64,000 nucleotides of DNA from contig JBLDXI010000042.1 of the NCBI GenBank assembly GCA_047495785.1, positions 2,790,001 to 2,854,000 on the forward strand, read 5' to 3'. Shown piece by piece: positions 597 through 39,354 of the stretch. The translations under genes and the position numbers were made by a program. Source of the DNA: Lepidodermella squamata (Eukaryota; Animalia; Gastrotricha). Below the pieces are notes generated by a model. That model did no database searches and was not told the DNA's origin. It saw nothing but the letters and a program-made list of their open reading frames with translations. How positions within the stretch are numbered: the stretch's first letter is position 1; the number at the start of each line of letters is the position of its first letter.

Positions 597-3500
597 CGCG
601 AAATGCATACGAATGTCGCTGCGTTGAAAGAAGCCAACGTCATTAGCGTTGAGCTGCAAAAGCTGGTCGAGTTTCAGTACACAATTCTGACTGATACGAC
701 CTACTATCCGATTCCGCCTGACCTCATTCCAAACGCCTTGGAGGAAAAGCTGGTTTTAAATCAGGCAGCCAATCAAATTTTGTCTCCTGGTAAGCTTTTT
801 CAAATAAAAAAATTTGGAACAATTTAGGAAGATTTGCACCACTAAAATTCAAGTTCAAGTGTTTTGAGAATTCGGGGATTTCGAAATAATTTAATGTTTT
901 TTAAATTTTTTAAAATTTAATTTTTTTCCAATTTTATTATCAAATTGTAAGATTAAATTCTAACTGGTTCGTATTCAATAAAATTTCGAATTTTGAATTT
1001 TAGTGAGCACCTATGGTGGAAGCGGAGCTGGAAGTGGTCAAACTACTCCAATTGTGGCCTCTGTGACGAATCGACCCCCGGTCAGCGTAGTCGCCGTTGA
1101 AGTTAAGGACATGAAAAATCAATCCCGGCACTTCTGGCCGCTTCAAAAGCTGCGCGAGCGGTTGTCTCGCATGCGAGAACTGTACGAACGCGAGACAGAA
1201 ATAGGCATCGGCTTATCGATGGAACCTATCACAGGGTCAGACCCCTTTTACGACCGCTTCCACTGGTTCCAGCTCATAGGCCGCGGGCTGGTTTTTATCA
1301 GTAATCTACTGCTTCGAGTCAGCCTGATGCAACGAGTCACCCTAGTCGACCACCATGGCCAAGCTATTGGCACTGTAACGGTGGCTCTTCAACCTCTAGA
1401 TCCTTCCGAAGTTTCAAAAAATCCCTTTGTTCTCTCGTTCCAGCCTAAATCCGGTTCTAATAAGGTAAAAAAATCGATTGTGTTCGGTAATTCTAGAGAT
1501 TTCAAACTAATTTCTAGTCTGCTTCGAATTCACCGTCCAACTCGCCTATGACGACGGATGTTGTCGCGACGTTCCAGCCTCAGCAGGACCCGGCTTCGGC
1601 GGCTAAAAGTGCGCTTCCCGTCAAAAGCTACTTCCGCATCACTATTGTGACGCTGTGCGGTCTTTCGCCCGATTTCGCCGACGTGTTTTGCCAGTTCGGC
1701 TTCATGGGCCTTCCCGAAGCCACGTTCATGACCGATCCGCTGCGCAACGAGGAAAAAGGAGGATCGCTTGGATACTACCACAGCCAAGACGTACATTTAT
1801 TTTTCGAATTTTCAGTTATTTTTTTAGTTGGTAGAAAAATCAAAGACAATTCTTGGAGATTTTCAAATAAGTTAAATTTTGTTGGTAAATTTTTTCTGAA
1901 AATTCGAAACGCACCATTTTTGGCTAATTTTTGAAATTTGAAATTTGAAATTTGAAATTTGAATATTTTTTGAAAAATCAAATTTTAAGGTGGATTTTTT
2001 AATTTTTCAGATTGAAGTGATTTTGGACGCTGATTTTGCTGATTACGCGCGAACTAAGCCGCTAGTCATCGAAGCTTACGGGCATTACCAGGGCGCGGCA
2101 ATGTCGCCCAGCAGTGAGCTGTTCGGCTCCTATGCAAGCATCCTGCGTCAAAATAACAGCTCATCAAGCCGATTGCGAAAAGCCTCACCCGGCCAGCAAT
2201 CAGGCTCATCATTGAACAAACCGCCTATTCGCCACGGTGGGCCGGGTAAGCCTGGTTCGGGTAACAAACTACTTGCAGTGCCGCCATCGAAATCCGGCGT
2301 GAAATCGCCAAGTGGTCAGGGGAAGTCGACAAGTGGCGGGAATCCTATTCTAAGGATGGATTTGCTCGTCTGGTTTCAGATCAAAGAATTATCACCAGAT
2401 GGGTCGTATACACCGACGCCTATTGATCAAACTGAGGTGATTGCGACGCCGGCGGGTGCTGGCGGCGCTGATCCGGGTTCGTGCGGCAGCCCGGCTTCGG
2501 TTAGTTTCGGAGCTTTCATCCTACGCCACGGCATGCAACGCCGGCTATCGATCACCATCTGCCAAGAACCCGGCAGCGAGCTGGTGTTCAAAAACGTGAA
2601 AGAGCTAAGGGTGTGCCGGATCCGCAATACCCCGGACCTTGTCTCAACCAGCTCAACCGGGGACGATCACCATTTCGGGGCGAGTGATGAAAACGAAGAT
2701 CCTGAGGCGTTGTCGCTCAAAGTGTTCGCGCAGCACTACATAGCGAAGGATGAAAGCCACGGCGGGCAGAATTTGTTTCTCATTGAAGCCAACTGGGATA
2801 GCTCGATGCATAACTCGCCACTGCTCAACCGGCTGAGCCACAGCCGGGAAAATATCTACATTACGGTTGTTTGCTATCTCGAAGTTGACAAATGCGTGTA
2901 TCCGATATGCCTGCACAAAGATCTTTGCGTCACCATTCAAGCTCGCGATAAATTGTAAGTCTATATTGAATAAATTTTAAATTTTCTGAAATTCGAAAAT
3001 CAATTATATGCAAATTTGATTGATTTATATTACATTTTCTGATTTTTTCAATTATTTTAAAATTCCCAAAATTGTTGAAGGGCGAGCCATGTGAACACCC
3101 TAAATCTAGGGTTCTAGAACTGGATTTTTCGAGTTGGTCCTCCCTATATTCAATTATATTGCTATCATGCAATTTTATTGTTATCATGCCCAACTCTTAA
3201 TATTACGTAATCAATAGCAATTATCGAAATCGATATCGATTCCAATTATCGATTTTACAAATCAGTGATTTTCCGATATTGGCTGCCCTGGAAGCTAACA
3301 TTAAAAATATTCCTGCATAACTGAGGGAACCAGTAGCTAAAATACAAAATCACAGAGTCATAAGGGACATCACACAAATAAAAGACCGAAATCGGAAAAT
3401 TTAGCGCTGGAACCTCAATTTTTTGGAGCAAATATTAGGCATCATTTTGAAAAATTGAATTTTATTCAAATTTTTTATTTTTATTTCTAGATTCAATCTG

Positions 3501-5554
3501 AGATCGATAAAGAGCTGGTTTTCGAACAGCACAACTGGCATTAAAATCGAGGAGGCCAACAAAATATCTGGCGTTTTCCAGCTGAATCTATACTCGAAAG
3601 ACCAAGTACGGCGGCATTGCGTTCGGCACCGGCAAAGCGTGAAAATGGCCGAATCACCTGTGACGGCCGCCTCCGAAAAGGACCCTTACGTTAGAGGCGA
3701 GGAAAATCTCGGCGGCTGGCGGCCGAGGCGCTACTCGTTGATACTGGAGCACTTGCAGGAGGTTGAAAAGTTGAATCGGTTGGAAATGGTTGAAAAAGCG
3801 CGGCATGTTCTATTGGTTCGGGAGGCTCTATCTGATAGCAGTCGATTGGACGATATTCAAAAGCTAACCTGCCATTTGGCATGCACTTTGGCCATGTGCG
3901 CTGGCAGTAAAGAAAGCCCTCAGTAAGTTCGAATAATAAATTCAAATTTTTTTAAATTTTCTAGAAATTTGATTTAAATCTTGAAATTTCAAATTTCAAA
4001 TTTTTTAATTCAAATTCAAAGCCATATTCAAATTTCAATTCAACTTTCAAAAAGAAATTCTAATTTGTTAAAAAAATACTTTTTTTAAATTTCGAAATTT
4101 CAAAAAAAATTTAAATTAATTTTTTCACTTTGCGATAATTAATTTTGTGATTTTCGCCCTTCCAGTGCTCTCCTTGCTGCCGAAAGTGCGTCGCATCTAA
4201 TGACGACTTCAATGTCGCTAGCGTCTCTGAAAGGCCGCAAGGGCGTTTCGAACGTTTCTTTAACCGACAGCCTCATCTCCGGCGATTCAGACAGCGGGCC
4301 AGACCGCGAGAAAGAAATAGCCGCTAAATGCCTAATGGTTCTAATGCAGGGCCACTGGTCTCGGACGAAAATCAAAGAATTTATCGCGTCTAGCAATGCG
4401 ATTTGCTGGGGCAGTGGCGTCATCGAAAGCGGCCGAGATTCTTACCAAGGCTCATCAGCCGCGCCTAGTGTTGGGCCAGAAATCGCGGTGGAGGGCCGGA
4501 AACAGTCGCTAACAACCATGGAGAAGTCGAATTCGAAAGTTTTTTCCGCAAGCTCGCCGTCTCCCTCCGTCGAAGACCTGGCGATGGCTAATGACCTTGA
4601 GCAAATAGGCGCAGGGGTTCCGCCGAGAATGACAACTAGCATGACGTCTGAAGGTTTAGCCAAGGTCCTGTTTCAACGAAATAACCGGCCAACCTCCTTG
4701 ATTACCGACCCATCGTCGATGAAACCACTCAAGCCGTTTTTAGAAGCTGCCGACGATTCGATGCTGAATCCGATGAAAAAATCACGATCTTGGAATTCGT
4801 TAGCGTCGACCTTATCGCCATCTGTCAGCATGCAGGATTTGAGCATGTTAGGTCATAGATCCCGCGAGGGCTCGATAACCGGTGCCGACCGTAACAACAC
4901 CGGAATTTACGTGGCTGAACTTGAGGAAATCGCCTTGAACCCTGTTGTAGCGAAGCGAGGTGTTGTCAACGTAATCGCCTCCCAAGGCCGAGCGTGGCAG
5001 AGGTTTTGGGTAGTTGTCAGACGGCCTTATGTGTTCTTTCACCTATTGGAAACCGGCGGTAGTGAGGAATTTGTCGTCAATTTATCCCGCTGTCAAATCG
5101 AATGCGCCGAAGACCAGAAAACGAAAAATGAAAACGTTTTCGCGATGAACAACTCTTACCGGCGAGTTCTGGTTCAAACGCTGAGCGCTGAGGAGTTCTA
5201 CGACTGGCTCTACGCTGTCAGCCCGTTGCTAGCCGGGAAACTTCGGTGAGTTGAGCCGGCGTTTAGTACTTGGCCTAGATTTTTTATACCCCGTCCATTT
5301 TACAGCGAGCTTGACGCGTTTTCGGTGCCTTATAAACCCCAAAAACATGTCAGGTTTTCGTCCCAGTCTTAAGGTGACGCGTTATAGGCATTGTAGAATT
5401 TCAGTTGTCACGTTTTATCGATTTGACAACGTTTAAAGCTATTTAGGCACGTTAGCGCAGGCACTGACTTGCATTTTTTGAATTATTTTGAATAGTCTTC
5501 CTTAATTTTAATTTTTTATTTTTTTCTAGGTGTGCGAGCACTTCGTCGAGTTGA
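597..5554 (+). CDS. unc-104: Kinesin-3 KIF1A/UNC-104-like, C-terminal part (stalk, DUF3694-like region, PH domain); multi-exon, motor domain lies upstream of the window
   Basis: ORF pieces carry KIF1 signatures: [93 protein letters not shown] and the PH end [14 protein letters not shown]. Exons approx 597-789, 1003-1463, ~1518-1790, 2011-2954, 3491-3922, 4166-5245, 5530-5554 with GT-AG junctions. Confidence 0.88.
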
Positions 5555-10899: not shown

Positions 10900-13800
10900 T
10901 CAATTTTCCTCATCAAGATGCCAAGGTATTGCGTAGCATTGGTTTTGGTTGACATGCGACGATGGCAGGAAAACCACTCGTTCCTTTGTGATATTAACAT
11001 CCAAGTCGACACGCAGGGCAAAGTAAGGCTGGTCGCGATTTGCTGCGATATTGCCCACAAGGTAACAGCGGGCAGCTCGGCGAGCTCGAGCGTTATTCGC
11101 AAACTCGTTCAAAAGGCCGTGTAGCAGCTCGTCATGCTCGTGACTTTGATGTTCAGGAAACTGCATCACGCGATTGAGCATTACATCGGCCTGCAAGATG
11201 CTGTAATTCTTAAACAAGGCGTAAACCTCGCCAGCTTCACCGTAAAAGAAACACAGCACCTCGCCAATTGTCACTTCAGCTGTCACAGGATGGTCGAAAA
11301 TTACGGCGTGAGACCGGGGTAACAAGCGGGGCGCGCCAATTCGCAGCATGCGACCATCATAACGCTGATGGAATAATTGCGCCGTGCCGAAAAATCCAAA
11401 AATCGCTGGCAACGCGTTAATGTTCAACGCCAATAACACAGCTTCGATCGCTGGATCATCCAGCATGTACAAAGGGACAGTGTTCGTCAGCGTACCATGG
11501 CGTTCAGTAGCGTAAGGGCGATTGATTAGCTGGAAATAAGCGAATCGCGTCATAATTTGAGACGCCTGGCCACGCGTCCCGTTAAATGCGCGTGTAAACC
11601 ATGACAACGCACCTTCACTGAAAAACAGTGAGAGCCAACCAATCGAACCGTGTCGAGCAGCAGCCCTTGCCAGGTGACCCAGGGAATGCAAAAGGTAAGT
11701 TTCAAGGCGAAGGCCGCCGCAGAGGCGAGGGAAGCAGTAGCGGAACCTTTCGATAAGAGACGATGCAGAGGAAATGTCAGCGAGTCGTTGAGCCTCGTTA
11801 TCCTCAACCTCATCGATGTCCAGCAAAAGTCGCATGGCAACTTGAAAAGTTAAAAACAGCATTACGTAGGCGGGCGTCATTTGATCGAGAAGCAAACTCG
11901 GACTAAGCGTGACACCAAAATATTTGTAGTGTTTCGCGTGGAAATTTTTAGCCACGTATTTCTCCTCGATCGATTCGATGCGCGTACCGGTTAGCTGTAA
12001 CGGCACGTGCGTGTTGAGTAATCGCCTTTTCATTTGCCGGTGTTGAACAGGTGAAATAAGATCCTGGTTATGAACCACGCATAATAGCAGAGACTTAGCT
12101 GAACCTTCCCAGCCGATGTGCATCGGATCACCTGGTGTATCATAAGGCGCCTGAACACCTTTTTCGGCCAAAGCTAACGGCTGCGGAGACGGCTTAACAC
12201 CGTGGTTGGGTGGATCACCGGGTTGCATAGTTGCAGCAACTTCAACAATTTCGTTATCGCCTCTCAGCGGGTATGTACCCGCGACTTCGTATGGCATTTT
12301 AAATGCACGGAATTCGTTCATATAAATAGCAGGCTGATGACAATCAGGGCAGGGATGCTCTGAATTATGTGGAGTCATATTCAGAGCATCAGACCTAGCC
12401 GGAGTATCGCCGACAAAAATGTCGAGGCTAACCGTAACACGAAACACAGCGTGCTCATCAAACCGCATGATTTGGCCTTGGCCCCGAAATCTGTCCAATT
12501 GTCGAAGACACTGACGCAAAAATAACTGCATGTCGGGCTTTGATGTTCCTTGCCACAGGCCAAGCACGACGAGACATGCAGGGTTCGCACGGCAGTACTT
12601 TGGTAGGCACTGCACTGAGGCGGTAGAAGGCCAAATGCTTACGTTGCCGCGCTTGCCGATCGGAGCACCGTCAGCATTCAATCGCAGGGCTACGTCTTGA
12701 TGGATGATAGTGCCTGGTGGTCTCGGCTCTGCAGTGTTCACATCAAGTAAGAATTCACGTAATACAACAAAAATCTGCCAGGCGAGCGATGGAAGTATTA
12801 TGTAAGCAACTCGCCCAGGGCGCGGGTTGGGGTCGGGGCAGCCTTGAGCTTCTCTCGGACAACGACCATTGGCCAACGGGTAACAGCAGTGAGCGCACAT
12901 TTTAGTCTTCGTCATGCGAGCATCGCCGAACATTTCTTTGATGCGCTTGTGGAGTAAGTAATAAGAGCCAGGTACATCAGCACCAGCAGGAGCATGACGA
13001 CGTACCATGTCGATAGCCATGTTCATTTGACGCTTGGACAACCCAGTTTGCTCCAGCTCCCATAGATCGAGATAAGCATTTGGTTGGCGTTCAGCGCCGT
13101 CGGGTGGATGAATGTGGATCCAAGAGCGAACGGTTTCGTGAAAATCGAAATCGACACGAATGCCATCACCGTTATTGTTATTGTTAGGATTCGGAGCTCC
13201 ATCGCCACCATCATCATCATCCTCATCATCACCACCACTCTCCTCGTCCGCGTCATCTTGGTCATCATCATCATAGCCACCGTCACCACCACCGCCAGCT
13301 CCAGGAGCAAGCGCTTGGTGGAATTCGAGCTCGTCATCGCTGCTCATTGAGCGTCCTTCGTCGTCGTCACCATTATCGCTATCGCCAAGTCCAGCCGGGT
13401 CGTGACCGGCAACGTTTTGACCCAGCGGAGAGGACTCTTCATAGCTGGACTCGAAACAAAATTCACCTGGGAGATCAACAAAAACATGGGATGCATGAGA
13501 TGAAAGTCTAACTAATGCATACCATTATCAAGCAGCGCTGAAGAATTGTTAGCTTGAGTTGGCGGCAATGAGGCACGACTGTTTGGTTCTACACAGATTG
13601 AGAAATAAATGAATAAACCATAGAGAATAGAGTTACCAGAGATGAAACTCCTATTGGAAACTTGAAGTTTTAATTCTTTTGGCGATTTTCGTAAATTTTA
13701 ATTATGGCGGATCTTTTTGAAACTGGCGCATACATGTTTACATGTAAAACAAGGGTGTTTTCCGCGCGCTATCCCCAAAATAGCTCATCTTGGAATTCCG

Positions 13801-15279
13801 ATTTTTTTATTGTAATTGATGGGGATTGGTTTCAACTACAACCAGTTCAAAGGATTTCGTACGGAAATGAACGGTTTTGACGCCACAGCGATTTCCGCGA
13901 AAGTCACTTTTTTGGGGGTTCATAAATGGGTGTTTTTGCCTTGACTCTACGGCCACATTCTTGATCGGACTATCACTTTCTTTATTGGAAATGATAGAAC
14001 TGAGTCCATGTTATAAGCGTGTGAAATTTCTTGTTTACGAAAGCCACCGTTCAAAAATTATTCATGGTTTTCGGATGCATTTTTTCGGCATTCTGCTTTT
14101 GAATATTGCTACTTGCAAAGGCTGAAATCGTTGTTATGTTTTTTTCAATTTATTTCAGAGCAGCCTACAGAATTTCCCTAATTTCGAGCATTTGATCATA
14201 CGAGGCACGAACAGGTTTTGTTATCCGGAATGACGGCCATGGGTGGTATAGGTATGGAGCATGTAAACTAAGAAAAAAATGCATCCGAAAACCATGAATA
14301 ATTTTTGAACGGTGGCTTTCGTAAACAAGAAATTTCACACGCTTATAACATGGACTCAGTTCTATCATTTCCAATAAAGAAAGTGATAGTCCGATCAAGA
14401 ATGTGGCCGTAGAGTCAAGGCAAAAACACCCATTTTTGAACCCCCAAAAAAGTGACCTTCGCGGAAATCGCTGTGGCGTCAAAACCGTTCATTTCCGTAC
14501 GAAATCCTTTGAACTGGTTGTAGTTGAAACCAATCCCCATCAATTACAATAAAAAAATCGGAATTCCAAGATGAGCTATTTTGGGGATAGCGCGCGGAAA
14601 ACACCCTTGTTTTACATGTAAACATGTATGCGCCAGTTTCAAAAAGATCCGCCATAATTAAAATTTACGAAAATCGCCAAAAGAATTAAAACTTCAAGTT
14701 TCCAATTGGAGTTTCATCTCTGGTAACTCTATTCTCTATGGAATAAACGAAAGAGCCAAACAATGAAAACACACCGAAAAGAGGCACAGATTGATTCACC
14801 TGGGCCGTCACGTTAGGGACAGCACTATGCGTGCCAATTGCTGTCGGGCTCAGAGCTGAAACGTTGTTGATAGGACCTCCATCAGCACTTTGATCGACAA
14901 AACTTGATGCGACCGTACCTGATGCACTGGTAACGTTCACACTTGGCTGAGCAAAGTCGACCACAACGTCCATGAAATCCTCACTCATCAATGCCTGTCT
15001 GTTGCTGTCGCTTTCAACGGAGGCAGTCTGTGATTCTTCGATTTCTGTTGACAAGACTTCGACGACTTCGTTTTTATCGCCTTCCTCTGAAGAAGAAGAT
15101 TGATCGGGTAACAGTCTAAGATTAGGACCATATCCACGAGTATATCGATTGTCAAGTTCGAAAGGATTTGAACCAGAATCGTCTTCTTCGCATTCTTCGT
15201 CAGAACTGTTTGAGTAAGACCGCTTACGGTTACCGACGTCGTCGAATAAGCTAGATTCGTCGGAAGACGAAGAAAACAT
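10900..15279 (-). CDS. EnSpm/CACTA-type DDE transposase, 3 exons (15279-14775, 13588-13523, 13466-10900), ~1045 aa
   Basis: Motifs LRLNADGAP...SIWP, GDTPARSDALN...HN...CPDC, DPMHIGWEG, HSLGHL...HGS...SLFFSE, plus an upstream CxxC...C...C. The exons join in phase 1/1 into 3138 nt with no internal stop; acidic low-complexity N-terminus. Confidence 0.88.
13619..14740. mobile_element. Non-autonomous foldback element, probably P-element superfamily, nested in transposase intron 1
   Basis: ~467-bp inverted arms (13619-~14086 and ~14272-14740, about 3 substitutions seen) beginning CATAGAGAATAGAGTTACC; ~185-bp spacer; exact 8-bp TSD GAATAAAC (13611-13618, 14741-14748). Confidence 0.9.
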
Positions 15280-15470
15280 TATAATCCACTCGGATTGTGA
15301 ACAGATGTCACAATAAATAAGCAATCTAACAAACAAATATAAAAATAAGCTGCAGGTTAAACAGCTGGAATGGAAATGAGGTGTTCAAGCATAAAACCAA
15401 TACTGATTTGGCAGTTCTAGCTTCAATCAGCACTACAAGAGAACTAACAAACAGTTTTTTAAACGATACG

Positions 15471-15521
15471 CATAGAGAATAGAGTTACCTATATAGAGAA
15501 TAGGTAACTCTATTCTCTATG
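15471..15521. mobile_element. 51-bp remnant or excision footprint of the same foldback family
   Basis: CATAGAGAATAGAGTTACC + TATATAGAGAATA + GGTAACTCTATTCTCTATG, flanked by the 8-bp TSD ACGATACG (15463-15470, 15522-15529). Confidence 0.88.
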
Positions 15522-16004
15522 ACGATACGTTCATAAAAAGCTTTACTGCTTGGAGAATAAAGAAACACTTTTAAAGTAAAAATTTAAGGTGGAATTTTCA
15601 CTATCGAATTTTCGTATAATAAACATTGCAGATGTCTGGAAATATAAATTTGAAATGTTTGCGAATGACGTGGTGCCAAAATGACTTTAGGAACAGGCCA
15701 ACAAAAAAACAAAAAACATAAACTTTAAAATTCGCGCGAAAATATCGACAAAATTGCCACGTCAGCGGTCTAGGCTGCAAATAAAAATTTCATATTTAAA
15801 ACAAATTATATTATTAATATTGTTAGCTGGTTATTTTTACAATTTCGCTCAATAATAATTGCTTTTATTTTGCCGCATGACTTTACGCAACTTTCGGGTT
15901 ACGCAACGAAGATCAAGCTACGGATGTGGCTAGCGTTTTGCTCCCGGAGATGACTACTGGGGATTCGACCTTGCAGTCATGATCAGCGTTGAAATTGATA
16001 TCGT

Positions 16005-16307
16005 CCATGCATGATGCATTAAAGATGCATCACCACATCAAGAAGGAAGAATCTCTTATCAGAGTAAGATGCATCAAACTATAATGTAAGACACATCTTT
16101 GATTCATGTAAAGCACGAGTAAGACAAATCTACGTATCATGTACCATTCATCTTTTATGAGTCTTACATTACGGAGTAGGCATGTAAGATACATGTTGTC
16201 ATCATCTTTACCACTTGTCCGACATGCATCTTACATGGTGCAAAGATGAATCTTACATGATGTGACTACATCTACATGGCATCTACATGTTGTTAAGATT
16301 AGGACAG
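16005..16307. repeat. Right subterminal repeat array of the CACTA element
   Basis: Repeated GATGCATC, GTAAGA, TCTTACAT and CATCTACATG motifs mirroring the left end. Confidence 0.75.
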
Positions 16308-17075
16308 TTTTTTTCCTTGGGCCGCAAAACCGCGGACGGAGACGCGCGCGCAAACTTGCTCGGTCAGGGAAACTTGCTTTTTTGAAAATGCCAAATATTA
16401 GATGCGAGATTATTTATTGAGCTGGAATTATGAATACCTGATATTTTTATTAATAAAATTTCTGAAGGACAAATGAAGAAAGCCCGCTCATGTATTACGT
16501 AATCTGGTGGAAGTTCCAACATCAAAGAAGACAGGGAAACCGCAACGCTTCAAGGGACTTCAGGTAATATTCAGCTGCATTGCACGGTAAGATGATGCCA
16601 ATCACTTTGATCGCTTGCAGCTTTGGATTATTACAATTTACAATCGAATTATTTTTGACACTGAAACGAACAACAGAAACGAAACTTGCGAACCACTGAT
16701 TGCTCGTCTTGATCATATCAAAATCTTTTAAATTGTGGTTACACCACTTATGATGTCAAGACTTGTTTATGAGGCTTCTAGCCTGATTGATGACATGCTC
16801 GACGGTTCGTTACTATGTATAAATTCCCAGCAAAACTTTGCTCTTCCTTCTCTTTCTTCTCTTCCTTTGCATAATCCTGCCAACATCTAACGTACCTATA
16901 ACATGTTTCAGATGTCTCTCGGAATTATGATTTTGGAGCTGAAGCTTTCAAAGCTTAGAACCAATGTGAATCCGTGTGAAAACCAAATGTATATCTCAAT
17001 TTTATTCAGAATTATTCATGAAAATCACAGGAGAATGCCATGCGTTGAATTTTATTCAAAAATTATTATTCGGGC

Positions 17076-18131
17076 TCAAGCAGATGGTAAATGTTTTTTC
17101 ACAAGATCAGTGCTGTACAGCCATAGCCGCTCAGCCATAACTTCGTCGCGAGCACGAGACGGTGTGCTGATCTCCTTGGAGTTTCTAAAAAAATGAAAAA
17201 AAAAATGAAAAATGAGTGCAATTCAATAATTAAATTTACTGGAAAAATCGACCAGATTGGCCTTCCAGGCCAGGCTTTGTTGCGCAATAAACAAGCGGCT
17301 CAGCGCCTTGATCGAAAGTCTTGAACAGAAACTTTGGCAACGCTGACAGCAATGTCTTGAAGGCCGGGACTGTATTCCGACCTTTTGACGGGTCCATAAC
17401 ACCGGGATCAACAGAAAACGTGGAAATCTTGGCGTTTTCTCGCTTCATCCTCAAATGAACAGCTAACGTGTTAGCGAGAGTGATTGCCAATTTAGAGCGA
17501 ACGTAAGCTTGCAAGGGATTGTAACCCTGCGAGGGATCGTGAAATTGCATGCCATAAGGCGGCCAGCACAAATAGAAAGCTTTCGGATCCGCTACCGTGT
17601 TCACTATGCGACCACCGCCGGGTGATTTCTTCAGATTTTCAAGCAACAGATTTGTCAGCAAAAAATGGCCGAGGAAATTACTCTGGAAGGTAACTTCATA
17701 CCCATCTTCAGTTGTCAGCGCCTTCATTGGAGGCAAAATGCCGGCATTGTTGATAAGAACATCGACTTGAATAGAGGACTGATTGATTCCATCTGCGAAT
17801 TTTCGAACTGAGGAAAGCGAGGTGAGATCCATTTTACGGCACTCGAGCCGGCCGTTTTTAGCCGCATCTGGGTCGTTGATTTTCTGACTGATTTCAGCAA
17901 TAGCACGTTCTCCAGCGTTCAAATCTCGCACAGCTAAAATCACCTTCTTAGCACCGCGACGAGCAAGCTCAGTGGCCGTAGCTTTGCCTATACCACTACC
18001 GTTGCAAAAAAGAAATGACTAATAGAAACGGGAATATTCATGCTAATTTACCTATTCGATCCAGTAACGATAAATGTCCCAAGGCATCTCCGTCCAGTAG
18101 GCAAAATTACCGAGATTTTAGCAGAAAACAT
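17076..18131 (-). CDS. Short-chain dehydrogenase/reductase, RDH11/12/13-like (copy 1), 3 exons
   Basis: IVTGSNSGIGKATA (split by an intron), LINNAGI, FQSNFLGHFLLTNLLL, catalytic YVRSK, VDPG, C-terminal AERLW. Start codon is uncertain. Confidence 0.85.
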
Positions 18132-18341: not shown

Positions 18342-19584
18342 TTAGTGAAAGAAGTGAGGATAATGAGCCATAGATGAAGGATAATGGCCGTGTTTTTCCG
18401 TCAGTTCCTTGCTCAATTGCCACAACTGTTCAGCCATTTCATCATTGACCATCCGACCAGGGTTACATGCTCGGCTATTCCTAATTAAAATCAATGATAA
18501 AAATCACGATTTTTTACGATTGAAAAATTAATTACTGAATATAACTGCCCGAAAGATGTTCAATTTGCGGTTGATTGGCACAATAGACAACCTGCTCGCC
18601 TGGGAGCTTGAAAGCTGCTTTCAGTAATGGCTCAGCCACATTTTGGATAGGAAAGGGCAAGCGGTTAAACACATCGGGCCGAACAACACCCGGATCTACG
18701 GCGAAAGTGCTGATTTTTGAGCTGTTATTCGATTGGCTTATCGGTGATAACTTTTCGAGGCGTTTATTCAACGCATGCGTAAAAAGCATCATAGCTAATT
18801 TCGATTGAGCAAAAGCTTTTAAAGGCCCGTATTGCCCTTGCCCGAATTCGAAATTCGGGTCTGAAATTCGAAATCCAACCGGACAGATCATTTTTGTTGT
18901 AACATGAGAAGCGACGACATTGACAATTCGGCTCGGCGAAGATCGTGATAACAACTCTAACAAATTAATTGTCAGCAAAAAATGGCCCAGATAATTCGTC
19001 TGGAAAATCAATTCGTTCCCGTCGATTGTTGTAGAACGCCGAACTGTACCCATTGTCGAGGCGTTGTTAATTAAAACGTGAAGTTCGGGCTCATTTTTTG
19101 CGATTGCCTCGGAAAAGTCCCAAACTGAGTCGAGCGAGGCTAAATCGAGGCGTCTGACCGAAAATTGAGTCGCTGAATTTTCGTCATCCTGATTTAAATT
19201 CGACGAGGCTGTATCGAATTGTTCGAGATCGTAATGATCGATTTTAACGTAATTTCCTTCCTTGGCTTCTTCAGCGACGCGTTGGTGGTATAATCTCAGT
19301 TTCTCGCTCAGCTCCTGAGCCGCCCATTCACCTGAGTCGAGATTTCGGCAAGCTAAGATGATGCGCTTGGCGCCATTTTTCGCAAGTTCGAATGCTATTG
19401 CTTTAGCCTGGCCGCTATTACCGCCAGTTATTAGCACGGTTTTGCCATCGATGAATGGAGCAGCCGGGCCTCGTGGATGGCTGATTTTATTGGCGTTTTT
19501 AACGCGCTGTGACGCAGCTAATATGACCGATGAAACCTTTTTGTCGAGTAATTTTAGCGCCCGTGACAATGAAGATGAAGACAT
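18342..19584 (-). CDS. Short-chain dehydrogenase/reductase, RDH11/12/13-like (copy 2, atypical active site), 2 exons
   Basis: ITGGNSGQAKA, LINNAS, FQTNYLGHFLLT, FAQSK at the YxxxK position, VDPG; last exon ...MAEQLWQLS. Confidence 0.85.
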
Positions 19585-33984: not shown

Positions 33985-35167
33985 ATTTGTTTATTGTACA
34001 CAGCAAGAACAAAATTTCTCGAATAATGTTATCGCATCCTCAATGATAACAATGATATAACAATATTTTTTATTTATTCATCATTTTAATTTACATAGCA
34101 AACAGAAAAACGTGTGAATTGATTGAATGAAGCACTCGATCTACCACCACGAGATATCCAGTGGTCACCGGCACCTATAAAGTGCCACTGCGTCGCGTGT
34201 GAAATAAGTATCATAAATCCGGGGCTTGTCGCGTCGAAATGTAACAAAAACTTCGACACAGTGTCTCATGGTTAAATTAAGCGCGATGTAAACAAAAAGA
34301 GGACTACATACAGAACCACATGGCAGCCGCTGTAACCTATTCAATATAGATATGCAGTTTTTATCAACAAAATTTCGCCACAAAAATCCCGATACCGCGA
34401 TATACTGACTGACTATCAAAAATTTCAGTTTTCATAATGCACTTTGCCATCTCAAAATCGATACGCCGCTTTCAAGGTGTAGTAGAGTTTTGTTGCCGAT
34501 TATCGCAGGAAATTTTGGCGTAGATTATCACGCGATGAGATGGTAATGATAATAATATGAATGACAAACAAAAAGAGACTGGATATAGCTTTTGTCGCCA
34601 GCAATGTCGCACTTCAAAAATGCGAGCTATGATGCTTAAAGCCTGCTAATCATTCATCTAGACCACATTACGCGCTGCTATAATAACGATATTGCTATCA
34701 TTATTACATCAATGGTTAAATATATAGATAAAAAGAAGCGTCGAATATTTGTTTTATGAATGCGATTTTAGTTAAAAACGGCGAGATATTTCTCAAGTTA
34801 GCACAAATACTCATTGAAATGATTGATTATTCCGTGGCATTTTTCGATATCTCACCAAATATATTATTCATAATGCTAATAAAAGCCGCATATATCAATT
34901 ATTTTTCAACTAGAGTGCGGGAGATATGTGTTTGTTTTGTCAGTTCGAGATGAATCATTTAGGAATAGAATAATAATTTCTTCAAGTATGAATGAATGAT
35001 GAAAAAAAAGAATCAGAAGTGTATTGAGGAATACGGGAACAGCCATTTTTTGTACACATTTTCGTTTGCCGATAATTTTTTTTATACGAAAGTTGTTAGT
35101 TCTTGTTAGTTCAACCTATATAGCGAATTTGAAGTACAAGGCAGGCCTAGCAAACGGGGCGGTTGGA

Positions 35168-37276
35168 TCAACGCCCTCCGCCGGCTTGCTCCTCGTTTCC
35201 GCCTTCGTCTTCGACGCCTTCTTGACCGGGTGCTGCGGCTGCCGGACCGCCTGCCGCCGGTTCCATTGGCGCCGCGGGTTGAGGCATCATCATCGGTTGC
35301 ATGTATTGCGGTTGTTCTTGCTTTTGACCGGTCATTACGTACACTAGAATTCAGGGGAAAAATAACAGGCACAAATTAGCGAAGTCGAATTTGGTGAATA
35401 AATAATAAAAATTGATTGGCTGTGTTCACAATCGATTATTTTTCGCCTCATTATAAAATTTTAAAACAAATTCAAACAGAAATTTATGGACTAACGATCA
35501 GCTTGTTCTACCGTAATTTTCTTTGAGAATTTCTTTTAGAAAAAATGGGAAAAAAAGGAAATTTTTTAAATTTAAACTTGAGTAGGAAAAAATTTGGCTA
35601 AAAATAAATTCCAAATAAATTTGAATCAATTTTACTAAAAAAAATTTTATAATAATAAAATAATAAAATAATAAAAATCCGTATTTAATTCCCTTCAATA
35701 ATTTTTTTGAAATGTTCTCGAAATTTCTTTACCCAAATTAATGATTCTAGACTCAATTTTTTAAAAACTGTAAGTAATTATTAGTGAACGCGTATGCCAA
35801 TCAATTTTTATAAATAACTTCATGTTTAAGTTTTGGCCCTTGAATTCAACTAAAATAGTTCTATGCAGGAAGCAGATCGACGATAGCATAGGGTAGATTG
35901 CCTTGTCTAGGAAATCAGGCGATCTTCTTACCGATAATGATAACGATGACTACGACCAAGACACCGCCTAATATCAGCCACATCTGCCGGGCGGAAATTA
36001 AGGTTCCAGGTAGGTAGATGATAGGTAGTCAAAGCGCGGCGGACGACAACAACGCAAATACGTGAGAAGCGAACATAAAATTGAAAAAAGGAAAAACAAA
36101 ACATAGTAAAACAGACGCCATATGATTTTAAAATTAAGGTAGAATATGAAACTCAAAGTTAGACCACAGCGCCTTTTGACGATCTAACAAAAGGCGCAAC
36201 TAAGGAAAATTGATCAAAAACCCAAAATGCAACACGACGACATTGATAAAGGTAATTTAAGCAGGAATCAAGGGCCAAATTATTTTTTTTCAAAATAAAA
36301 ACCAGGCTGATTTTCAGCGTCATTTCTGCTTACCGACGACAGCAATAATCACGACGGCAACAACGCCGACCAGAATGAGGGTCATCTGATTTTTTTAATT
36401 TTCAAATGTTTTTTTTTAATATTTTCGGATTATTTCGATCGAGACTAATGCACTCTATAAATAAACCTACCTGAAATCGATATTAAATTAAAAAAATACA
36501 CAACATGAAAAACAACACAGATGGGCCGCCCCGGGAGATAATCCCTCTAAGCTATGATGAAAATAGAAAAAATAAGGGTACCTTCAAATTCTCCCACCAA
36601 AATTTCCGCTTCAACCGCACTGCACTTCTTTCAAAATGTTGAGCCGATGTTTGGAGATGCTCTAAATAAAAATAACGGAAAACAATAACAAAACAACACA
36701 AGACAACAACAAAATAGTTATATTAAAGCTTCCTTAATTTTTGGGACTGGTGGGTGGTTCATTTTTGACACAGACAAATGAACAAAACGAAAAACAAACA
36801 AACGAGACGACATTTAAAAGATCGAATAGCACACCTTCATATTTTGCCACCAGAATTTGTTCTTAAGTTTACCGGCACTTTGTTCGAAGCGCGATGCGCC
36901 GACCTGTAGGGCCTCTTTAAATCGAATAGAATTTCAGGTTAAAAATTCGAAATTTCGTAAACTGGGGATTTTTCGCGGATAGACTAAATTCGGGGTACTT
37001 ACCTGCCCTGTTGTCGAGTTCTGAGAGTTTCTGATCACGTTCGAGCACTTTTTCGACGTTGACACGCATAATATCGACAACCTCATCAACTTGAGCCTGC
37101 GTTTGCTGAAGACGTTTGCTGGGCATGTATGTACGAGGGGGTTCGCCGCGACCTCCTGCGCCGCCTGTCGACGCACCCTCAGCGGCACCAGCATTAGCTG
37201 GCGGGGCACCACCTTTTGCTGCCCTAAAATATGCCAAAATAGTTTCGACGCAACATTTTCGAAGTGAAACTTACAT
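35168..37276 (-). CDS. VAMP: Synaptobrevin/VAMP (neuronal-type R-SNARE) with alternative exons 3A/3B and 4A/4B and a long luminal tail
   Basis: Exon 1 ends in AT|gtaag (start codon split); exon 2 [39 protein letters not shown]; exons 36914-36835 and 36661-36582 (both ...FWW.N.K); TM exons 36385-36334 and 35983-35932; last exon 35343-35168. Confidence 0.93.
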
Positions 37277-39354
37277 TTAGCAGAACAGCGAGTAATGAAA
37301 TGATAAAAAAGGAGGATTAAATGGTCTCTAAATCAACAGAAATTCACGATGTATAGAAATGCACTTGCCGACAAATCTTCAAGACACACAAAAGTTCTAA
37401 TATTTAGCTGGGAGGTGAATTGTGCGCTAATAATGATTTCTTTAAAAAGCTGCCGTCATGTTTATGCCCCGTTGTAACAATTTATAAATAAGTACAACAG
37501 GGGGAATAGCCGTCATCATCGACATATATATCGTCTACTACATCACTGTAAAATCTATCCTTATATATTTTCTAATAATGCCCACATTTATTCTCGTGTG
37601 TGTGGCACGCAGTTATAAAACTCTGTGTATATTTGGATGTACAAAGGGTACATTTTCGATTGATCACGACGAAAAAGCGCGCATAAATATACAATATATA
37701 TGTATACACATAGACGAGCGAGTGTGAGCGAAGTATAAATGCAAAGCGCGTCGTCTCCTCTCGCCGCGCGCGATGTGCCACGGCGAATCTGCAGTAAAAT
37801 ACAAGCTCAAAAAACTGGAAATGCGAAATCGATAAAAATTGATGGAAATATTTTGGGCGCCTTCGTCGTCTGCCGTCGTCGATTTCACAGCAGAGCCTTA
37901 TTATTATACACCTAATACGATGAGGCATATATTCGTGAACACACACGACGGCAGAGCGGAAAAAATCGATCGCTCTTGAGAGCGAGAAGCGAGGGTCTAC
38001 GAAGATGTGGCCGTGTGTGAAACATCAGCCGAAACAATACAACACTACTCGCCAGTGCATTCATCGGCAGCCTAAATCACAATATTGCGCAAAAATCGAA
38101 AAATCATAGGGACGATGCAATGAGTAATGCAAACAAAAAATGACGTTAGCGAACTTTGAATGCCGCTGACCGGGCAAGAGCATTTATTGGGTCAGGATAT
38201 AATGTCAGATTTCTATTCGCCGCTGCGCTGAGAGAGTACTTTGTAATTTGTAATGCGTTAAAACACATCGAGACAAAAAAGAGTATTCTTAATCCTTCCA
38301 CAATCTAATCATCATTCGGTGAAAATTTACATTATCCTAATAAAAGAATGACGTAAATGATGGGAGGATATTCTGAAAATAATGATTGAAGCGGCCTGAA
38401 ACAGCTGATTCCCATTAATTTCAGCCTGGAACGAATTACCGAGGAAATATGCACAAGCTTATTCAAGACGAAACTACATGCATAATAGTTAAGTGACGTC
38501 ATGTTAATTTCATTGTACGAAAAGCAAAGCTAAAAGACGTCGTTGGTAAGATGTCAGAATTGAACAAGTAATGAAACGTTTCAGTGTGTTGAAATAAACA
38601 TTTGCGTAGAATGACTTATGCACCTTGCAATCATTAGCTCCACGATAAGCCTTTTCTGCGAGGCAAATGAAGCATCCCACAAATCAAACCATGTGCAATG
38701 TTCGAAATGTTACAAGGCAATTAATTTATGATCTATGACTTGTTCCAATCTTGATGATTTTGATGAAAGAATCTCAGATCATGGCTAATCAGCAGGGTGC
38801 CGTGCAAATTCAATACTCCAGTTCACGACTCGGCGTAACACGCTGGATATCATGGAAGAATTTCATATTGAAAGGAAACCCATAAATTTGCCAATCGGCC
38901 AGGTCAGACTTAAATAATTACAAATGCTCGGAGCATACAGCCAATAAGGAGTTTCTTATCTAAATCTGTAAATATGTGAAGGGCGTGTCAAGCAATTAAC
39001 GCAACGAACTGCAGAACGAGGAAGGCAAGTAACTGGACAAATACTTACTTGTATCCATGACCACAGAGCCCTGATCCCTGCACGCCTCAACTCCAGGTAA
39101 CTCCCTCTTTCTACCTTTATGTAAAATGTCATCTCTCCCCGTCATATTTCTCCATAATATGAAGAGGCCGAATAAATTTCGGAGAACGATTTCCAGTGTT
39201 CACGGTCCATGATTTGATGCAATGCTACGAAGAAGTCAGATCATTGTCAAAATTCAGACTATAATGTAAGCATGTCACACAATCGCTTATCGCTTGAACA
39301 CTTTGAAACCTAAGATCATCATCATCATCATTTTATTGTTTTCCTTCTGATTGC

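What the first reader, a model, noticed from the sequence alone, without database searches (positions are those of the whole stretch)
35932..36914. Synaptobrevin with two consecutive pairs of duplicated, apparently mutually exclusive exons (combinatorial v-SNARE)
Seen: after the shared N-terminal SNARE exon there are two homologous 80-nt exons, 3A (36914-36835, [27 protein letters not shown]) and 3B (36661-36582, [27 protein letters not shown]). Two homologous 52-nt TM exons follow, 4A (36385-36334, [17 protein letters not shown]) and 4B (35983-35932, [17 protein letters not shown]). All have intact AG/GT sites, phases match within each pair, and there is one shared last exon. Including both members of a pair shifts the frame. 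The introns between them are UG/U-rich. Known: these segments form the C-terminal zippering layers, the juxtamembrane WW/basic motif and the fusion-pore-lining helix; SNAP-25 uses mutually exclusive exons 5a/5b. Inference: one gene makes up to 4 VAMP isoforms that tune fusion, doing the job of separate VAMP paralogs. I do not know a described VAMP gene with this layout.
Basis: partly seen in the sequence, partly recalled or inferred. Interest (0 to 1): 0.88.

Follow-up and report, generated by a model that had tools for sequence, protein, structure and literature searches.

The report
Synaptobrevin gene with two linked exon switches
One synaptobrevin (VAMP) gene of a small unidentified invertebrate carries two neighbouring pairs of alternative exons, and its RNA shows them used in fixed partnership, giving two vesicle-fusion proteins rather than four; similar layouts are already annotated, apparently undescribed, in a brachiopod and in molluscs.

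Summary
On the minus strand lie exon 2 (37223-37003), 3A/3B (80 nt each), 4A/4B (52 nt each) and one last exon. All have AG/GT sites, and only one-of-each combinations keep the frame.

An RNA-like run of the same species (X1) has contigs for 2-3A, 2-3B, 3A-4A, 3B-4B, 4A-5 and 4B-5. None carries 3A-4B, 3B-4A, double inclusion or skipping. So both pairs are real mutually exclusive exons, but the evidence points to two linked isoforms (A-A and B-B), not four.

3B keeps all SNARE core layers (+4 to +8) and changes surface and linker residues. 4B is the "MW" membrane-helix type that NCBI labels VAMP3-like in molluscs.

The layout is not unique. The Lingula anatina VAMP gene has 3 x 2 x 3 tandem alternative exons, including an exon-3 pair and an MW exon. 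Molluscs have the membrane-helix pair. I found no paper describing any of this.

The linkage is most simply explained by shared regulation: A exons have weak acceptors, and UGUUGU-rich tracts sit between the alternative exons. A U12-like 3B-4B intron and RNA pairings remain weak alternatives. A relative's transcript joins a 3A-type to a 4B-type exon, so linkage may not be absolute.

Verdict: real, moderately interesting, a new member of a known kind.

The parts
37275..37327 (-). Exon 1: 5' UTR plus the first two bases (AT) of the split start codon. Its 5' end is an acceptor (tag|AGACC) joined in RNA to a leader that is absent from the window.
   Evidence: Joint 37222/37274 in X1 (depth 203) and in X2. 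Loose end at 37329 carrying the same 24 letters in X1 and 15 of them in X2. The leader is not found in the window with up to 3 mismatches.
37003..37223 (-). Exon 2 (221 nt): variable N-terminus plus the N-terminal half of the SNARE motif, including the zero-layer Arg. Donor is CAG|GTAAGT.
   Evidence: Pfam PF00957 E 3.9e-11. Joined to both 3A and 3B in X1.
36835..36914 (-). Exon 3A (80 nt): [27 protein letters not shown], canonical type. Weak acceptor (AAG) and weak donor (GTGTGC).
   Evidence: Joints 2-3A (depth 396) and 3A-4A (303) in X1. A 2-3A-4A-5 contig in relative organism C. 27/27 aa and 64/80 nt identical to the relative's transcript L001, so all changes are synonymous.
36582..36661 (-). 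Exon 3B (80 nt): [27 protein letters not shown]. The core layers L, A, F, A, L are kept and 11 surface or linker residues change. Strong acceptor (T-rich tract, TAG). The donor GTACCC is very poor for U1.
   Evidence: Joints 2-3B and 3B-4B lie in one X1 contig of depth 375. A 2-3B joint is also seen in organism C, with 4 differences in 72 nt. The one difference listed, at 36618, is a synonymous third-position change.
36334..36385 (-). Exon 4A (52 nt): [17 protein letters not shown], first part of the membrane helix. Its acceptor is preceded by an A-rich tract (pyrimidine fraction 0.32).
   Evidence: Joints 3A-4A and 4A-5 (depth 208) in X1, and the same path in organism C.
35932..35983 (-). Exon 4B (52 nt): [17 protein letters not shown], the 'MW' type of membrane helix.
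   Evidence: 11-12/17 identical to Lingula and Physella MW exons, 8-10/17 to MM exons. Joints 3B-4B (depth 375) and 4B-5 (394) in X1. 39/52 nt identical to the membrane-helix exon of relative L001, against 26/52 for 4A.
35168..35343 (-). Shared last coding exon (end of the membrane helix, a Pro/Gln-rich luminal tail, and the stop). The 3' UTR continues to lower coordinates.
   Evidence: Joined to both 4A and 4B.
36662..36834 (-). Intron between 3A and 3B. It is U/UG-rich (T 49%, UGUU 5.2 per 100 nt) and contains GTTGTTGTC at 36709-36701, about 40 nt before the 3B acceptor.
36028..36145 (-). Intronic stretch 45-160 nt upstream of 4B. It is UG-rich, contains GTTGTTGTC (36053-36045), and was the only intron piece laid from the relative organism C at 85% likeness or better.
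   Evidence: X4 record 19: 118 nt with 4 substitutions and 6 gap letters..
36573..36581 (-). The 3B donor GTACCCTTA, one mismatch from the U12-type consensus GTATCCTT. This is a speculative signal.
   Evidence: Read. Weakened.
35997..36003 (-). CCTTAAT, a U12-branch-site-like motif whose branch A lies 14 nt before the 4B acceptor. This is a speculative signal.
   Evidence: Read. Weakened.
36259..36278 (-). Arm of the best local RNA duplex (-23 kcal/mol, 12-bp core UUUGGCCCUUGA/UCAAGGGCCAAA). It would pair with 35832-35852 and loop out exon 4B. Not significant against shuffles.

Best explanation
This is a single synaptobrevin/VAMP (R-SNARE) gene. Its C-terminal working part is encoded twice over, as two adjacent clusters of tandem-duplicated, mutually exclusive exons in the interleaved order 3A, 3B, 4A, 4B. 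Shown: all four exons are spliced into mRNA at comparable levels. Shown: in the one RNA-like run of this species, 3A is joined only to 4A and 3B only to 4B. The gene therefore makes two main v-SNAREs. A-A has a canonical +4 to +8 surface and an 'MT' membrane helix. B-B has the same hydrophobic core layers but 11 changed surface or linker residues, and an 'MW' helix with a third Trp at the membrane interface. Shown: any other exon number breaks the frame, and 3A+3B creates a stop inside 3B. Inferred mechanism of choice: B is the default path, because 3B and 4B have the better acceptors. The A path needs a cell-type-specific factor that acts on the UGUUGU-rich tracts. These lie only in the three introns between the alternative exons, that is downstream of the A exons and upstream of the B exons. 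One regulator, CELF/UNC-75-like by analogy, that represses both B acceptors and helps the weak A sites would flip both clusters together and so produce the linkage. Mis-spliced products would be removed or be non-functional. Inferred function: a neuronal-type and a general or specialised exocytic v-SNARE from one gene, with the zippering end, linker and membrane helix co-adapted as one module.
For: Exon anatomy, phases and frames.
RNA use: in X1 exon depth is 160-570 and intron depth is 3-20. Six exon-exon joints are present at depth 208-396. 3B sits in a single contig that runs from exon 2 into all of 4B. There are no joints for 3A-4B, 3B-4A, 3A-3B, 4A-4B or skipping, although intron contigs of depth 3-17 were laid.
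Relative organism C has a 2-3A-4A-5 contig and a 2-3B joint.
Purifying selection: 3A has 16 nt changes and no aa change against L001. 3B keeps L/A/F/A/L at layers +4 to +8 (alignment).
Family: PF00957.
A 'B-type' exon 3 travels with an MW helix elsewhere: P0164 from Lingula and five unnamed transcripts.
Splice-site asymmetry: pyrimidine fraction 0.59 with AAG (3A) and 0.32 (4A), against 0.77 with TAG (3B) and 0.59 with CAG (4B).
Motifs: TGTTGT occurs 6 times in 1.66 kb of these introns against 0.55 per kb in the window. Two of the window's five minus-strand GTTGTTGT lie upstream of 3B and of 4B. The one before 4B is inside the only intron stretch laid from organism C.
Against: The linkage rests on assembled contigs of one run of unknown tissue. 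Contigs drop rare variants and give no phasing beyond their own length, so minor 3A-4B or 3B-4A forms cannot be excluded.
A transcript of a more distant relative (L001/P0002) joins a 3A-type exon to a 4B-type helix. Either cross forms exist, or that species lacks 3B.
No tissue data exist, so 'neuronal versus general' is only an analogy.
The regulator model is built on motif density and site strength in one sequence. The shared 9-mer has roughly a 0.2 chance expectation between two introns of these sizes, before allowing for their U/G-rich composition.
No exact (G/U)UGUUGUG lies in the intra-pair introns. The only TRTTGTG is at 36505, in the 3B-4A intron.
The affinity of 4A to the mollusc MM type is not supported (5-8/17 identical).
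Confidence: 0.68

Rival explanations
1. The system is truly combinatorial. The two clusters are chosen independently and all four isoforms are made. The run examined happens to be dominated by cells or stages that make A-A and B-B, or its assembly lost the cross junctions.
For: All four combinations are in frame. A relative's mRNA contig is 3A-type plus 4B-type. Contigs show presence, not absence (tool note).
Against: With independent choice at roughly 50:50 in each cluster, cross junctions would have depths in the hundreds. 3B runs straight into 4B in a single contig. Elsewhere a B-type exon 3 is seen with MW helices only.
Confidence: 0.17
2. The linkage is hard-wired by spliceosome incompatibility. 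The 3B-4B intron is removed by the minor (U12-type) spliceosome and the 3A-4A intron by the major one. The 3B donor then cannot use the 4A acceptor, and the 3A donor cannot use the 4B acceptor. This is the principle proposed for the JNK exon 6a/6b pair (from my own knowledge).
For: The 3B donor is GTACCCTTA: 7 of 8 matches to GTATCCTT, but only 5 of 9 to the U1 consensus, and it is still used efficiently. CCTTAAT fits the branch consensus TCCTTRAY, with the branch A 14 nt before the 4B acceptor and no good pyrimidine tract there. By my rough estimate, the joint chance for one intron is about 1e-5.
Against: Position +4 of the donor is C, where U12-type donors almost always have T. The homologous Lingula sites are ordinary U2-type (donor GTTCAA, long pyrimidine tract before the MW exon). 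Unchecked notes on this genome describe AT-AC introns with major-type donors at classic minor-intron sites, which hints that the minor spliceosome was lost. No RTATCCTT occurs in the 64-kb window. A U-rich run directly after the 3B donor fits a U1-helper (TIA-type) site equally well.
Confidence: 0.07
3. The linkage is set by competing long-range RNA pairings. Two nested helices between the 3B-4A intron (about 36546 and 36476) and the region just upstream of 4B (about 36025-35975) would loop out 4A. A helix between 36278 and 35852 would loop out 4B. The two arrangements cross each other and so cannot both form.
For: Local duplexes of -20.2 to -23.0 kcal/mol lie in exactly these positions. There are 11 duplexes at or below -20 in the real sequence against 0-8 in 13 shuffles. 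Another agent's note reports a conserved exon-selecting pairing in a different gene of this genome.
Against: The best energy (-23.0) is matched or beaten in 4 of 13 dinucleotide shuffles. No comparative sequence is available, so there is no covariation test. The only intron stretch laid from organism C (36028-36145) does not contain the full arms.
Confidence: 0.08

Closest known systems
VAMP/synaptobrevin gene of the brachiopod Lingula anatina (RefSeq isoforms X1-X10, XP_013393957 to XP_013393968; locus L046)
   Same: It has the same 80-nt exon 3 and 52-nt membrane-helix exon. Exon 3 is present twice in tandem: a canonical copy, then a copy with AQ.FE..RLKRK..WWQN, which is 18/27 identical to window 3B. 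The membrane-helix exons are in tandem with the MW type last. The one model that holds the second exon-3 copy joins it to the MW exon.
   Different: Lingula has three membrane-helix exons, three copies of an extra split SNARE exon, and two alternative last exons. I did not check its RNA. The RefSeq isoforms I retrieved combine the other clusters freely. I could not decide whether the exon-3 pairs are homologous or convergent. I found no paper on it.
Mollusc VAMP genes (Physella acuta, Biomphalaria glabrata, the chiton Liolophura sinensis) with MM/MW alternative membrane-helix exons
   Same: One gene carries two tandem 52-nt membrane-helix exons with the MW type second. RefSeq isoforms differ only in that exon and are named 'synaptobrevin-like' (MM) or 'VAMP3-like' (MW).
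   Different: Exon 3 is single in those loci. Window 4A is not clearly the MM type.
SNAP-25 exons 5a/5b (PMC2581893)
   Same: A tandem-duplicated, mutually exclusive exon pair in a core exocytic SNARE changes a handful of residues near the membrane-anchoring region.
   Different: It is a Q-SNARE, it has one pair only, and it is restricted to vertebrates.
C. elegans unc-64 syntaxin exons 8a/8b and the two exon sets of unc-32, both controlled by UNC-75/CELF (PMC4946901 and Kuroyanagi 2013 as cited there)
   Same: Alternative exons encode alternative SNARE membrane helices. One UGUUGUG-binding factor sets two exclusive-exon clusters of one gene in neurons. This is the model I propose for the linkage here.
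   Different: The genes differ. unc-64 uses alternative last exons rather than internal pairs. No factor has been identified here.
Separate paralogs: vertebrate VAMP1/2 versus VAMP3 (cellubrevin), and Drosophila nSyb versus Syb (my own knowledge)
   Same: Two closely related brevins differ mainly in the linker, the membrane helix and the termini. Vertebrate VAMP3 has an MW helix start and VAMP1/2 an MM start.
   Different: Those are different genes with their own promoters. Vertebrate VAMP3 keeps a canonical exon-3 sequence, whereas the B isoform here also remodels the +4 to +8 surface.
Arthropod N-cadherin, three pairs of mutually exclusive exons with tissue-specific use (PMC2655722)
   Same: One gene has several exclusive-exon pairs, and it produces 'neural' and 'mesodermal' variants.
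   Different: The pairs are far apart rather than adjacent and interleaved. The protein is unrelated.

Membership tests
Synaptobrevin/VAMP (brevin-type R-SNARE) | Match to the Synaptobrevin domain model PF00957 above its curated cut-off | tested here: met
   Exon 2 alone scores 43.1 bits against a cut-off of 26.4, E 3.9e-11. The relative P0002, which carries an identical 3A peptide, scores 110.8 bits over model positions 3-88.
Synaptobrevin/VAMP (brevin-type R-SNARE) | Arginine at the zero layer, and hydrophobic heptad layers through +8 in every isoform | tested here: met
   The alignment places VLERDQKL on the conserved column. Both 3A and 3B keep L, A, F, A, L at the positions that are +4 to +8 in VAMP2 numbering. 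The numbering itself comes from my own knowledge.
Synaptobrevin/VAMP (brevin-type R-SNARE) | Basic/Trp-Trp juxtamembrane linker followed by a single C-terminal membrane helix, with no longin domain | tested here: met
   The linkers are [12 protein letters not shown] and [12 protein letters not shown]. They are followed by 17 hydrophobic residues from exon 4A or 4B plus VYV from exon 5. Only about 35 residues precede the SNARE motif.
Tandem-duplicated mutually exclusive exons | Neighbouring exons of equal length and phase with recognisable homology and their own splice sites | tested here: met
   Lengths are 80/80 nt and 52/52 nt, and all sites are AG/GT. 3A/3B are 16/27 aa identical, tblastn E about 2e-7 to 6e-7. 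4A/4B are 9/17 aa identical, which is weak on its own.
Tandem-duplicated mutually exclusive exons | Mature RNA holds exactly one member of each cluster | tested here: met
   X1 contigs give 2-3A, 2-3B, 3A-4A, 3B-4B, 4A-5 and 4B-5. None gives 3A-3B, 4A-4B or skipping. This is contig-level evidence only.
Combinatorial (independent) multi-cluster exon choice, Dscam-like | All cross-combinations between clusters occur | tested here: not met
   No 3A-4B or 3B-4A joint appears in X1, although low-depth contigs were laid. A relative's 3A-type/4B-type transcript keeps the question open.
Exclusivity by U2/U12 spliceosome incompatibility (JNK type) | U12-type donor RTATCCTT, and a branch site TCCTTRAY 10-15 nt before the acceptor | tested here: inconclusive
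   The donor GTACCCTT has one mismatch, at the near-invariant +4. The branch-like CCTTAAT lies 14 nt before the 4B acceptor.
Exclusivity by U2/U12 spliceosome incompatibility (JNK type) | The organism has a minor spliceosome, and the intron type is conserved in relatives | tested here: not met
   The homologous Lingula sites are U2-type. Presence of the minor spliceosome in this organism could not be tested. Unchecked notes on this genome hint that it was lost.
Docking-site/selector RNA pairing (Dscam exon 6 type) | Conserved complementary intron elements, stronger than chance, with covariation | tested here: inconclusive
   Candidate helices exist, but the best energy is within the shuffle range. 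No relatives' intron sequence was available.

The most novel reading that the evidence does not exclude
The two interleaved clusters act as one hard-wired, two-exon module switch. 3B can only be spliced to 4B, and 3A only to 4A, because of a cis-encoded incompatibility: a U12-like 3B-4B intron, or mutually exclusive looping structures. The cell would then make a single decision, and the SNARE zippering end, linker and membrane helix would always be exchanged together. This would be an ancient 'B module' shared with brachiopods.
Probability: 0.15. Interest if true: 0.75.

Novelty: new member of a known kind. Interest (0 to 1): 0.52.

Why it matters
SNARE researchers compare VAMP2, VAMP3 and fly nSyb/Syb to ask how the last zippering layers, the Trp-rich linker and the membrane helix shape fusion. 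Here evolution has packaged those three parts into two alternative exon pairs of one gene and, in the data available, exchanges them only together. That argues they are co-adapted. It also supplies four natural constructs (A-A, B-B and the two unused chimeras) for fusion assays.

The finding also points to an unreported pattern. Many invertebrate VAMP genes encode 'synaptobrevin-like' and 'cellubrevin-like' membrane helices as alternative exons. This bears on how the vertebrate VAMP1/2/3 paralogs divided their roles.

For splicing research, the gene is a compact case (under 1.7 kb) of two adjacent, interleaved exclusive-exon clusters with coupled choice, in which the ordinary intron between 3B and 4A is never removed on its own.

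Tried and rejected
1. Extra exon copies or a second VAMP gene in the window: none found (tblastn).
2. Assembly artefact: rejected. The copies are only about 56% identical at the DNA level, and all four are spliced in RNA.
3. Finding 3B-type isoforms in protein databases. The window's own proteins are not in the collection. The closest entry is an unnamed metatranscriptome protein, P0002. A region-restricted search with a B-type module returned 17 hits and no new named B-type protein.
4. Two degenerate DNA scans of metagenome contigs for 3B-like coding sequence. The first found nothing. The second found 43 hits, none of them VAMP-related (all carry a recurring KFWWENLKE.. motif).
5. Identifying the organism. 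A dehydrogenase ORF gave at most 42% identity, and under 40% for hits covering most of the ORF, to anything named. A kinesin fragment in the protein atlas was uninformative. There are no Rfam or tRNA hits in the window. Another agent's guess of 'gastrotrich' is unverified.
6. Whole-intron duplex folding gave meaningless long duplexes with non-significant z-scores. The windowed scan gave candidates that do not beat shuffles in best energy.
7. Orthology of 4A with the mollusc MM exons: not supported by identity counts.
8. Look-ups of amphioxus, Priapulus and tick loci failed, because only the longest isoform of a gene is indexed. How deep the MM/MW switch goes in deuterostomes and ecdysozoans was therefore not checked at the genome level.
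9. Literature: seven searches and one paper check found no description of mutually exclusive exons in a VAMP gene. The library excludes most subscription journals.
Full report
**Observation**

I read 35000-39000 on the minus strand and rebuilt the exons by script.

| Exon | Coordinates | Length | Peptide |
|---|---|---|---|
| 3A | 36914-36835 | 80 nt | [27 protein letters not shown] |
| 3B | 36661-36582 | 80 nt | [27 protein letters not shown] |
| 4A | 36385-36334 | 52 nt | [17 protein letters not shown] |
| 4B | 35983-35932 | 52 nt | [17 protein letters not shown] |

- The four alternative exons lie between exon 2 (37223-37003) and one last coding exon (35343-35168).
- Every exon has AG and GT at its borders.
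- The four one-of-each combinations give open 176-residue proteins. Any other number of exons shifts the frame, and 3A+3B puts a stop inside 3B.
- 3A/3B are 45/80 nt and 16/27 aa identical. 4A/4B are 29/52 nt and 9/17 aa identical.
- A low-stringency tblastn of the isoforms against the whole window found no further copies.
- The start codon is split AT|G by a 51-nt intron (37274-37224).

**RNA evidence**

The look-up of sequencing runs gave five runs. I laid X1 to X4 on 34300-38300 at 85% likeness.

X1 is the same species: 144 of 169 contigs are at least 99% alike. It behaves as RNA, with exon depth 160-570 and intron depth 3-20.

| Joint in X1 | Depth |
|---|---|
| exon 1 - exon 2 | 203 |
| 2 - 3A | 396 |
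| 2 - 3B | 375 |
| 3A - 4A | 303 |
| 3B - 4B | 375 |
| 4A - 5 | 208 |
| 4B - 5 | 394 |

- The 2-3B and 3B-4B joints lie in one contig that runs from exon 2 through 3B into all of 4B.
- There is no joint for 3A-3B, 4A-4B, exon skipping, 3A-4B or 3B-4A.
- Low-depth intron contigs were assembled and laid, so cross junctions at more than a few percent should have appeared. Contigs cannot prove absence.
- In the related organism C (X3, X4; 90-95% alike) one contig reads 2-3A-4A-5 and another joins exon 2 to 3B.
- The one listed 3B difference in organism C (36618) is a synonymous third-position change.

Both pairs are therefore genuine mutually exclusive exons. The data show two linked isoforms, A-A and B-B, at similar levels.

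**What the protein is**

- Exon 2 matches Pfam Synaptobrevin.
- An exhaustive profile search with exon 2 found its closest relative, P0002. A word-based search with P0002 as query then placed the gene among invertebrate synaptobrevin/VAMP proteins.
- In the alignment, exon 3 covers what in VAMP2 numbering are layers +4 to +8 plus the basic/Trp-Trp linker. Exon 4 starts the membrane helix.
- 3B keeps L, A, F, A, L at the five layer positions and changes 11 surface or linker residues. That is the pattern expected of a functional alternative, not a decaying copy.

**Relatives**

- The nearest database entry, P0002, comes from a 1,313-nt JGI contig that carries the whole uninterrupted 570-nt reading frame, so I take it for a transcript (L001).
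- Its exon-3 region is 27/27 aa and 64/80 nt identical to 3A, so all 16 changes are synonymous.
- Its membrane-helix exon is 4B-like: 39/52 nt identical, against 26/52 for 4A.
- That transcript is therefore a 3A-type/4B-type combination. Either cross forms occur in that species, or it lacks a 3B exon. This is the main evidence against strict linkage.

**The layout is not unique**

RefSeq isoforms of molluscs differ only in the membrane-helix exon. The MW type is named 'VAMP3-like' and the MM type 'synaptobrevin-like'.

| Locus | Exon 3 | Membrane-helix exons | Other |
|---|---|---|---|
| Physella acuta (L002) | single, 80 nt | MM then MW, 52 nt each | two alternative last exons |
| Liolophura sinensis, a chiton (L047) | single | MM then MW | none noted |
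| Lingula anatina (L046) | two copies | MM, SM, MW | three copies of the VVDIMR...RA exon; two alternative last exons |

- The two Lingula exon-3 copies are [27 protein letters not shown], then [27 protein letters not shown].
- RefSeq lists at least ten Lingula isoforms. The seven I retrieved (X1-X6 and X10) all carry the first exon-3 copy.
- The only Lingula model I retrieved with the second exon-3 copy (P0164) joins it to the MW exon.
- Five unnamed transcripts with the same 'AQ/AR.FE..RLKRK' exon-3 type also carry MW helices.
- Window 3B is 18/27 identical to the second Lingula copy and 14/27 to the first.
- Window 4B is 11-12/17 identical to MW exons and 8-10/17 to MM exons.
- Window 4A has no clear affinity to MM exons.
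- Homology of the pairs between phyla is therefore possible but unproven.
- Seven literature searches and one paper check found no description of exclusive exons in any VAMP gene.

**How the choice may work**

- The intra-pair introns are 173 and 350 nt long, so steric exclusion is unlikely.
- The frame rules, together with mRNA surveillance (inferred), explain exclusivity within a pair.
- Linkage needs more explanation, because the ordinary 196-nt intron between 3B and 4A is never removed on its own.
- The A exons have poor acceptors and the B exons have better ones. 3A has AAG with pyrimidine fraction 0.59, and 4A has 0.32. 3B has TAG with 0.77, and 4B has CAG with 0.59.
- UG-rich tracts lie only in the three introns between the alternative exons. 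UGUU density is 5.2 per 100 nt in the 3A-3B intron against 0.62 in the window. TGTTGT is 6.6-fold enriched. GTTGTTGTC lies about 40 nt before 3B and 61 nt before 4B.
- The tract before 4B lies inside the only intron piece laid from organism C.
- In C. elegans, UNC-75/CELF binds (G/U)UGUUGUG. It controls two sets of exclusive exons in unc-32 and the alternative membrane-helix exons of syntaxin unc-64 (PMC4946901).
- My best model is therefore a default B path and a factor-dependent A path. One regulator would flip both clusters. This is inference.

**Alternatives for the linkage**

1. The 3B donor GTACCCTTA, and a CCTTAAT motif 14 nt before the 4B acceptor, resemble U12-type signals. Such signals would forbid 3B-4A and 3A-4B.
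   - The donor deviates at the near-invariant +4 position.
   - The Lingula counterparts are U2-type.
   - Unchecked notes on this genome suggest the minor spliceosome was lost.
   - RTATCCTT is absent from the window.
2. Local RNA duplexes could loop out 4A or 4B.
   - Their best energy is within the range of dinucleotide shuffles.
   - No comparative intron sequence was available.

**Comparison and verdict**

- The gene is a member of the brevin family. Its two clusters meet the tests for tandem-duplicated exclusive exons.
- It fails the test for combinatorial use in the data at hand.
- It is closest to the annotated but apparently undescribed Lingula and mollusc VAMP genes.
- By mechanism it is closest to SNAP-25 5a/5b (PMC2581893), to unc-64 and unc-32 under CELF control, and to multi-pair genes such as N-cadherin (PMC2655722).
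- I rate it a new member of a known kind.
- New here: RNA evidence that two interleaved clusters are used as one bipartite module, and the link between a remodelled +4 to +8 surface and the MW helix.
- The organism remains unidentified. Another agent's note guesses a gastrotrich.

Noticed in passing
window 37327-37329 (minus strand), also 37177; L001:1-50: The VAMP mRNA does not start in the window. At the acceptor tag|AGACC, contigs of X1 and of organism B continue with a leader (mRNA sense ...ATCTGCGAATTTGATTTGTGTCTA) that is absent from the 26 kb upstream. The same letters, preceded by GGGAACC, also hang on a contig at 37177. The relative's transcript L001 begins with a similar 33-nt stretch ending in ...AATTTGAG. 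This looks like spliced-leader trans-splicing, or else a very distant first exon.
   Followed up: partly
L046 (Lingula anatina LFEI02000111.1) 11225-17989: The brachiopod VAMP gene has three consecutive clusters of tandem alternative exons: 3 copies of the VVDIMR...RA exon, 2 of exon 3 and 3 membrane-helix exons, plus two alternative last exons. I found no paper on this.
   Followed up: partly
proteins P0003 (Ephemera danica), P0004, P0005, P0177 (Orchesella cincta): These gene models (two named, from hexapods; two unnamed) read through two tandem copies of the (Q)VVDIM(R/K)TNV(E/Q)KVLERD(Q/E)KLS(E/Q)LD(D/N)RA exon. This suggests an unrecognised exclusive-exon pair for the N-terminal half of the SNARE motif in hexapod synaptobrevin genes.
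   Followed up: no
proteins P0262 (Branchiostoma floridae X8), P0239 (Glandiceps), P0244/P0256 (ticks), P0230 (Priapulus): MW-type and MI/MM-type membrane helices occur among numbered isoforms in deuterostome and ecdysozoan invertebrates too. The helix switch that mirrors vertebrate VAMP3 versus VAMP1/2 may therefore predate the vertebrate paralogs. The loci could not be fetched.
   Followed up: partly
window 34300-35100: The summed RNA contig depth in X1 is about 1,700-3,500 here, several times that of the VAMP coding exons (about 600), with loose ends at 34373 and 34376. This may be a long 3' UTR counted in overlapping contigs, or another abundant transcript.
   Followed up: no
window 35405-35420 and 35796-35811: A perfect 16-nt inverted repeat (ATAAAAATTGATTGGC / GCCAATCAATTTTTAT) lies inside the 588-nt intron between 4B and exon 5. 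X1 has 'opposite strands' joints in the same intron (35493/35586 and 35756/35861).
   Followed up: no
window 1990-5249 (+) and 18532-19584 (-): Neighbouring genes: a KIF1/unc-104-type kinesin tail (DUF3694 and PH domains), and a short-chain dehydrogenase of the retinol-dehydrogenase 11-13 type. The latter is at most 42% identical, and under 40% for hits covering most of the ORF, to any named protein.
   Followed up: partly
whole window: The U12-type donor word RTATCCTT does not occur on either strand, against 3.7 expected from shuffles.
   Followed up: no
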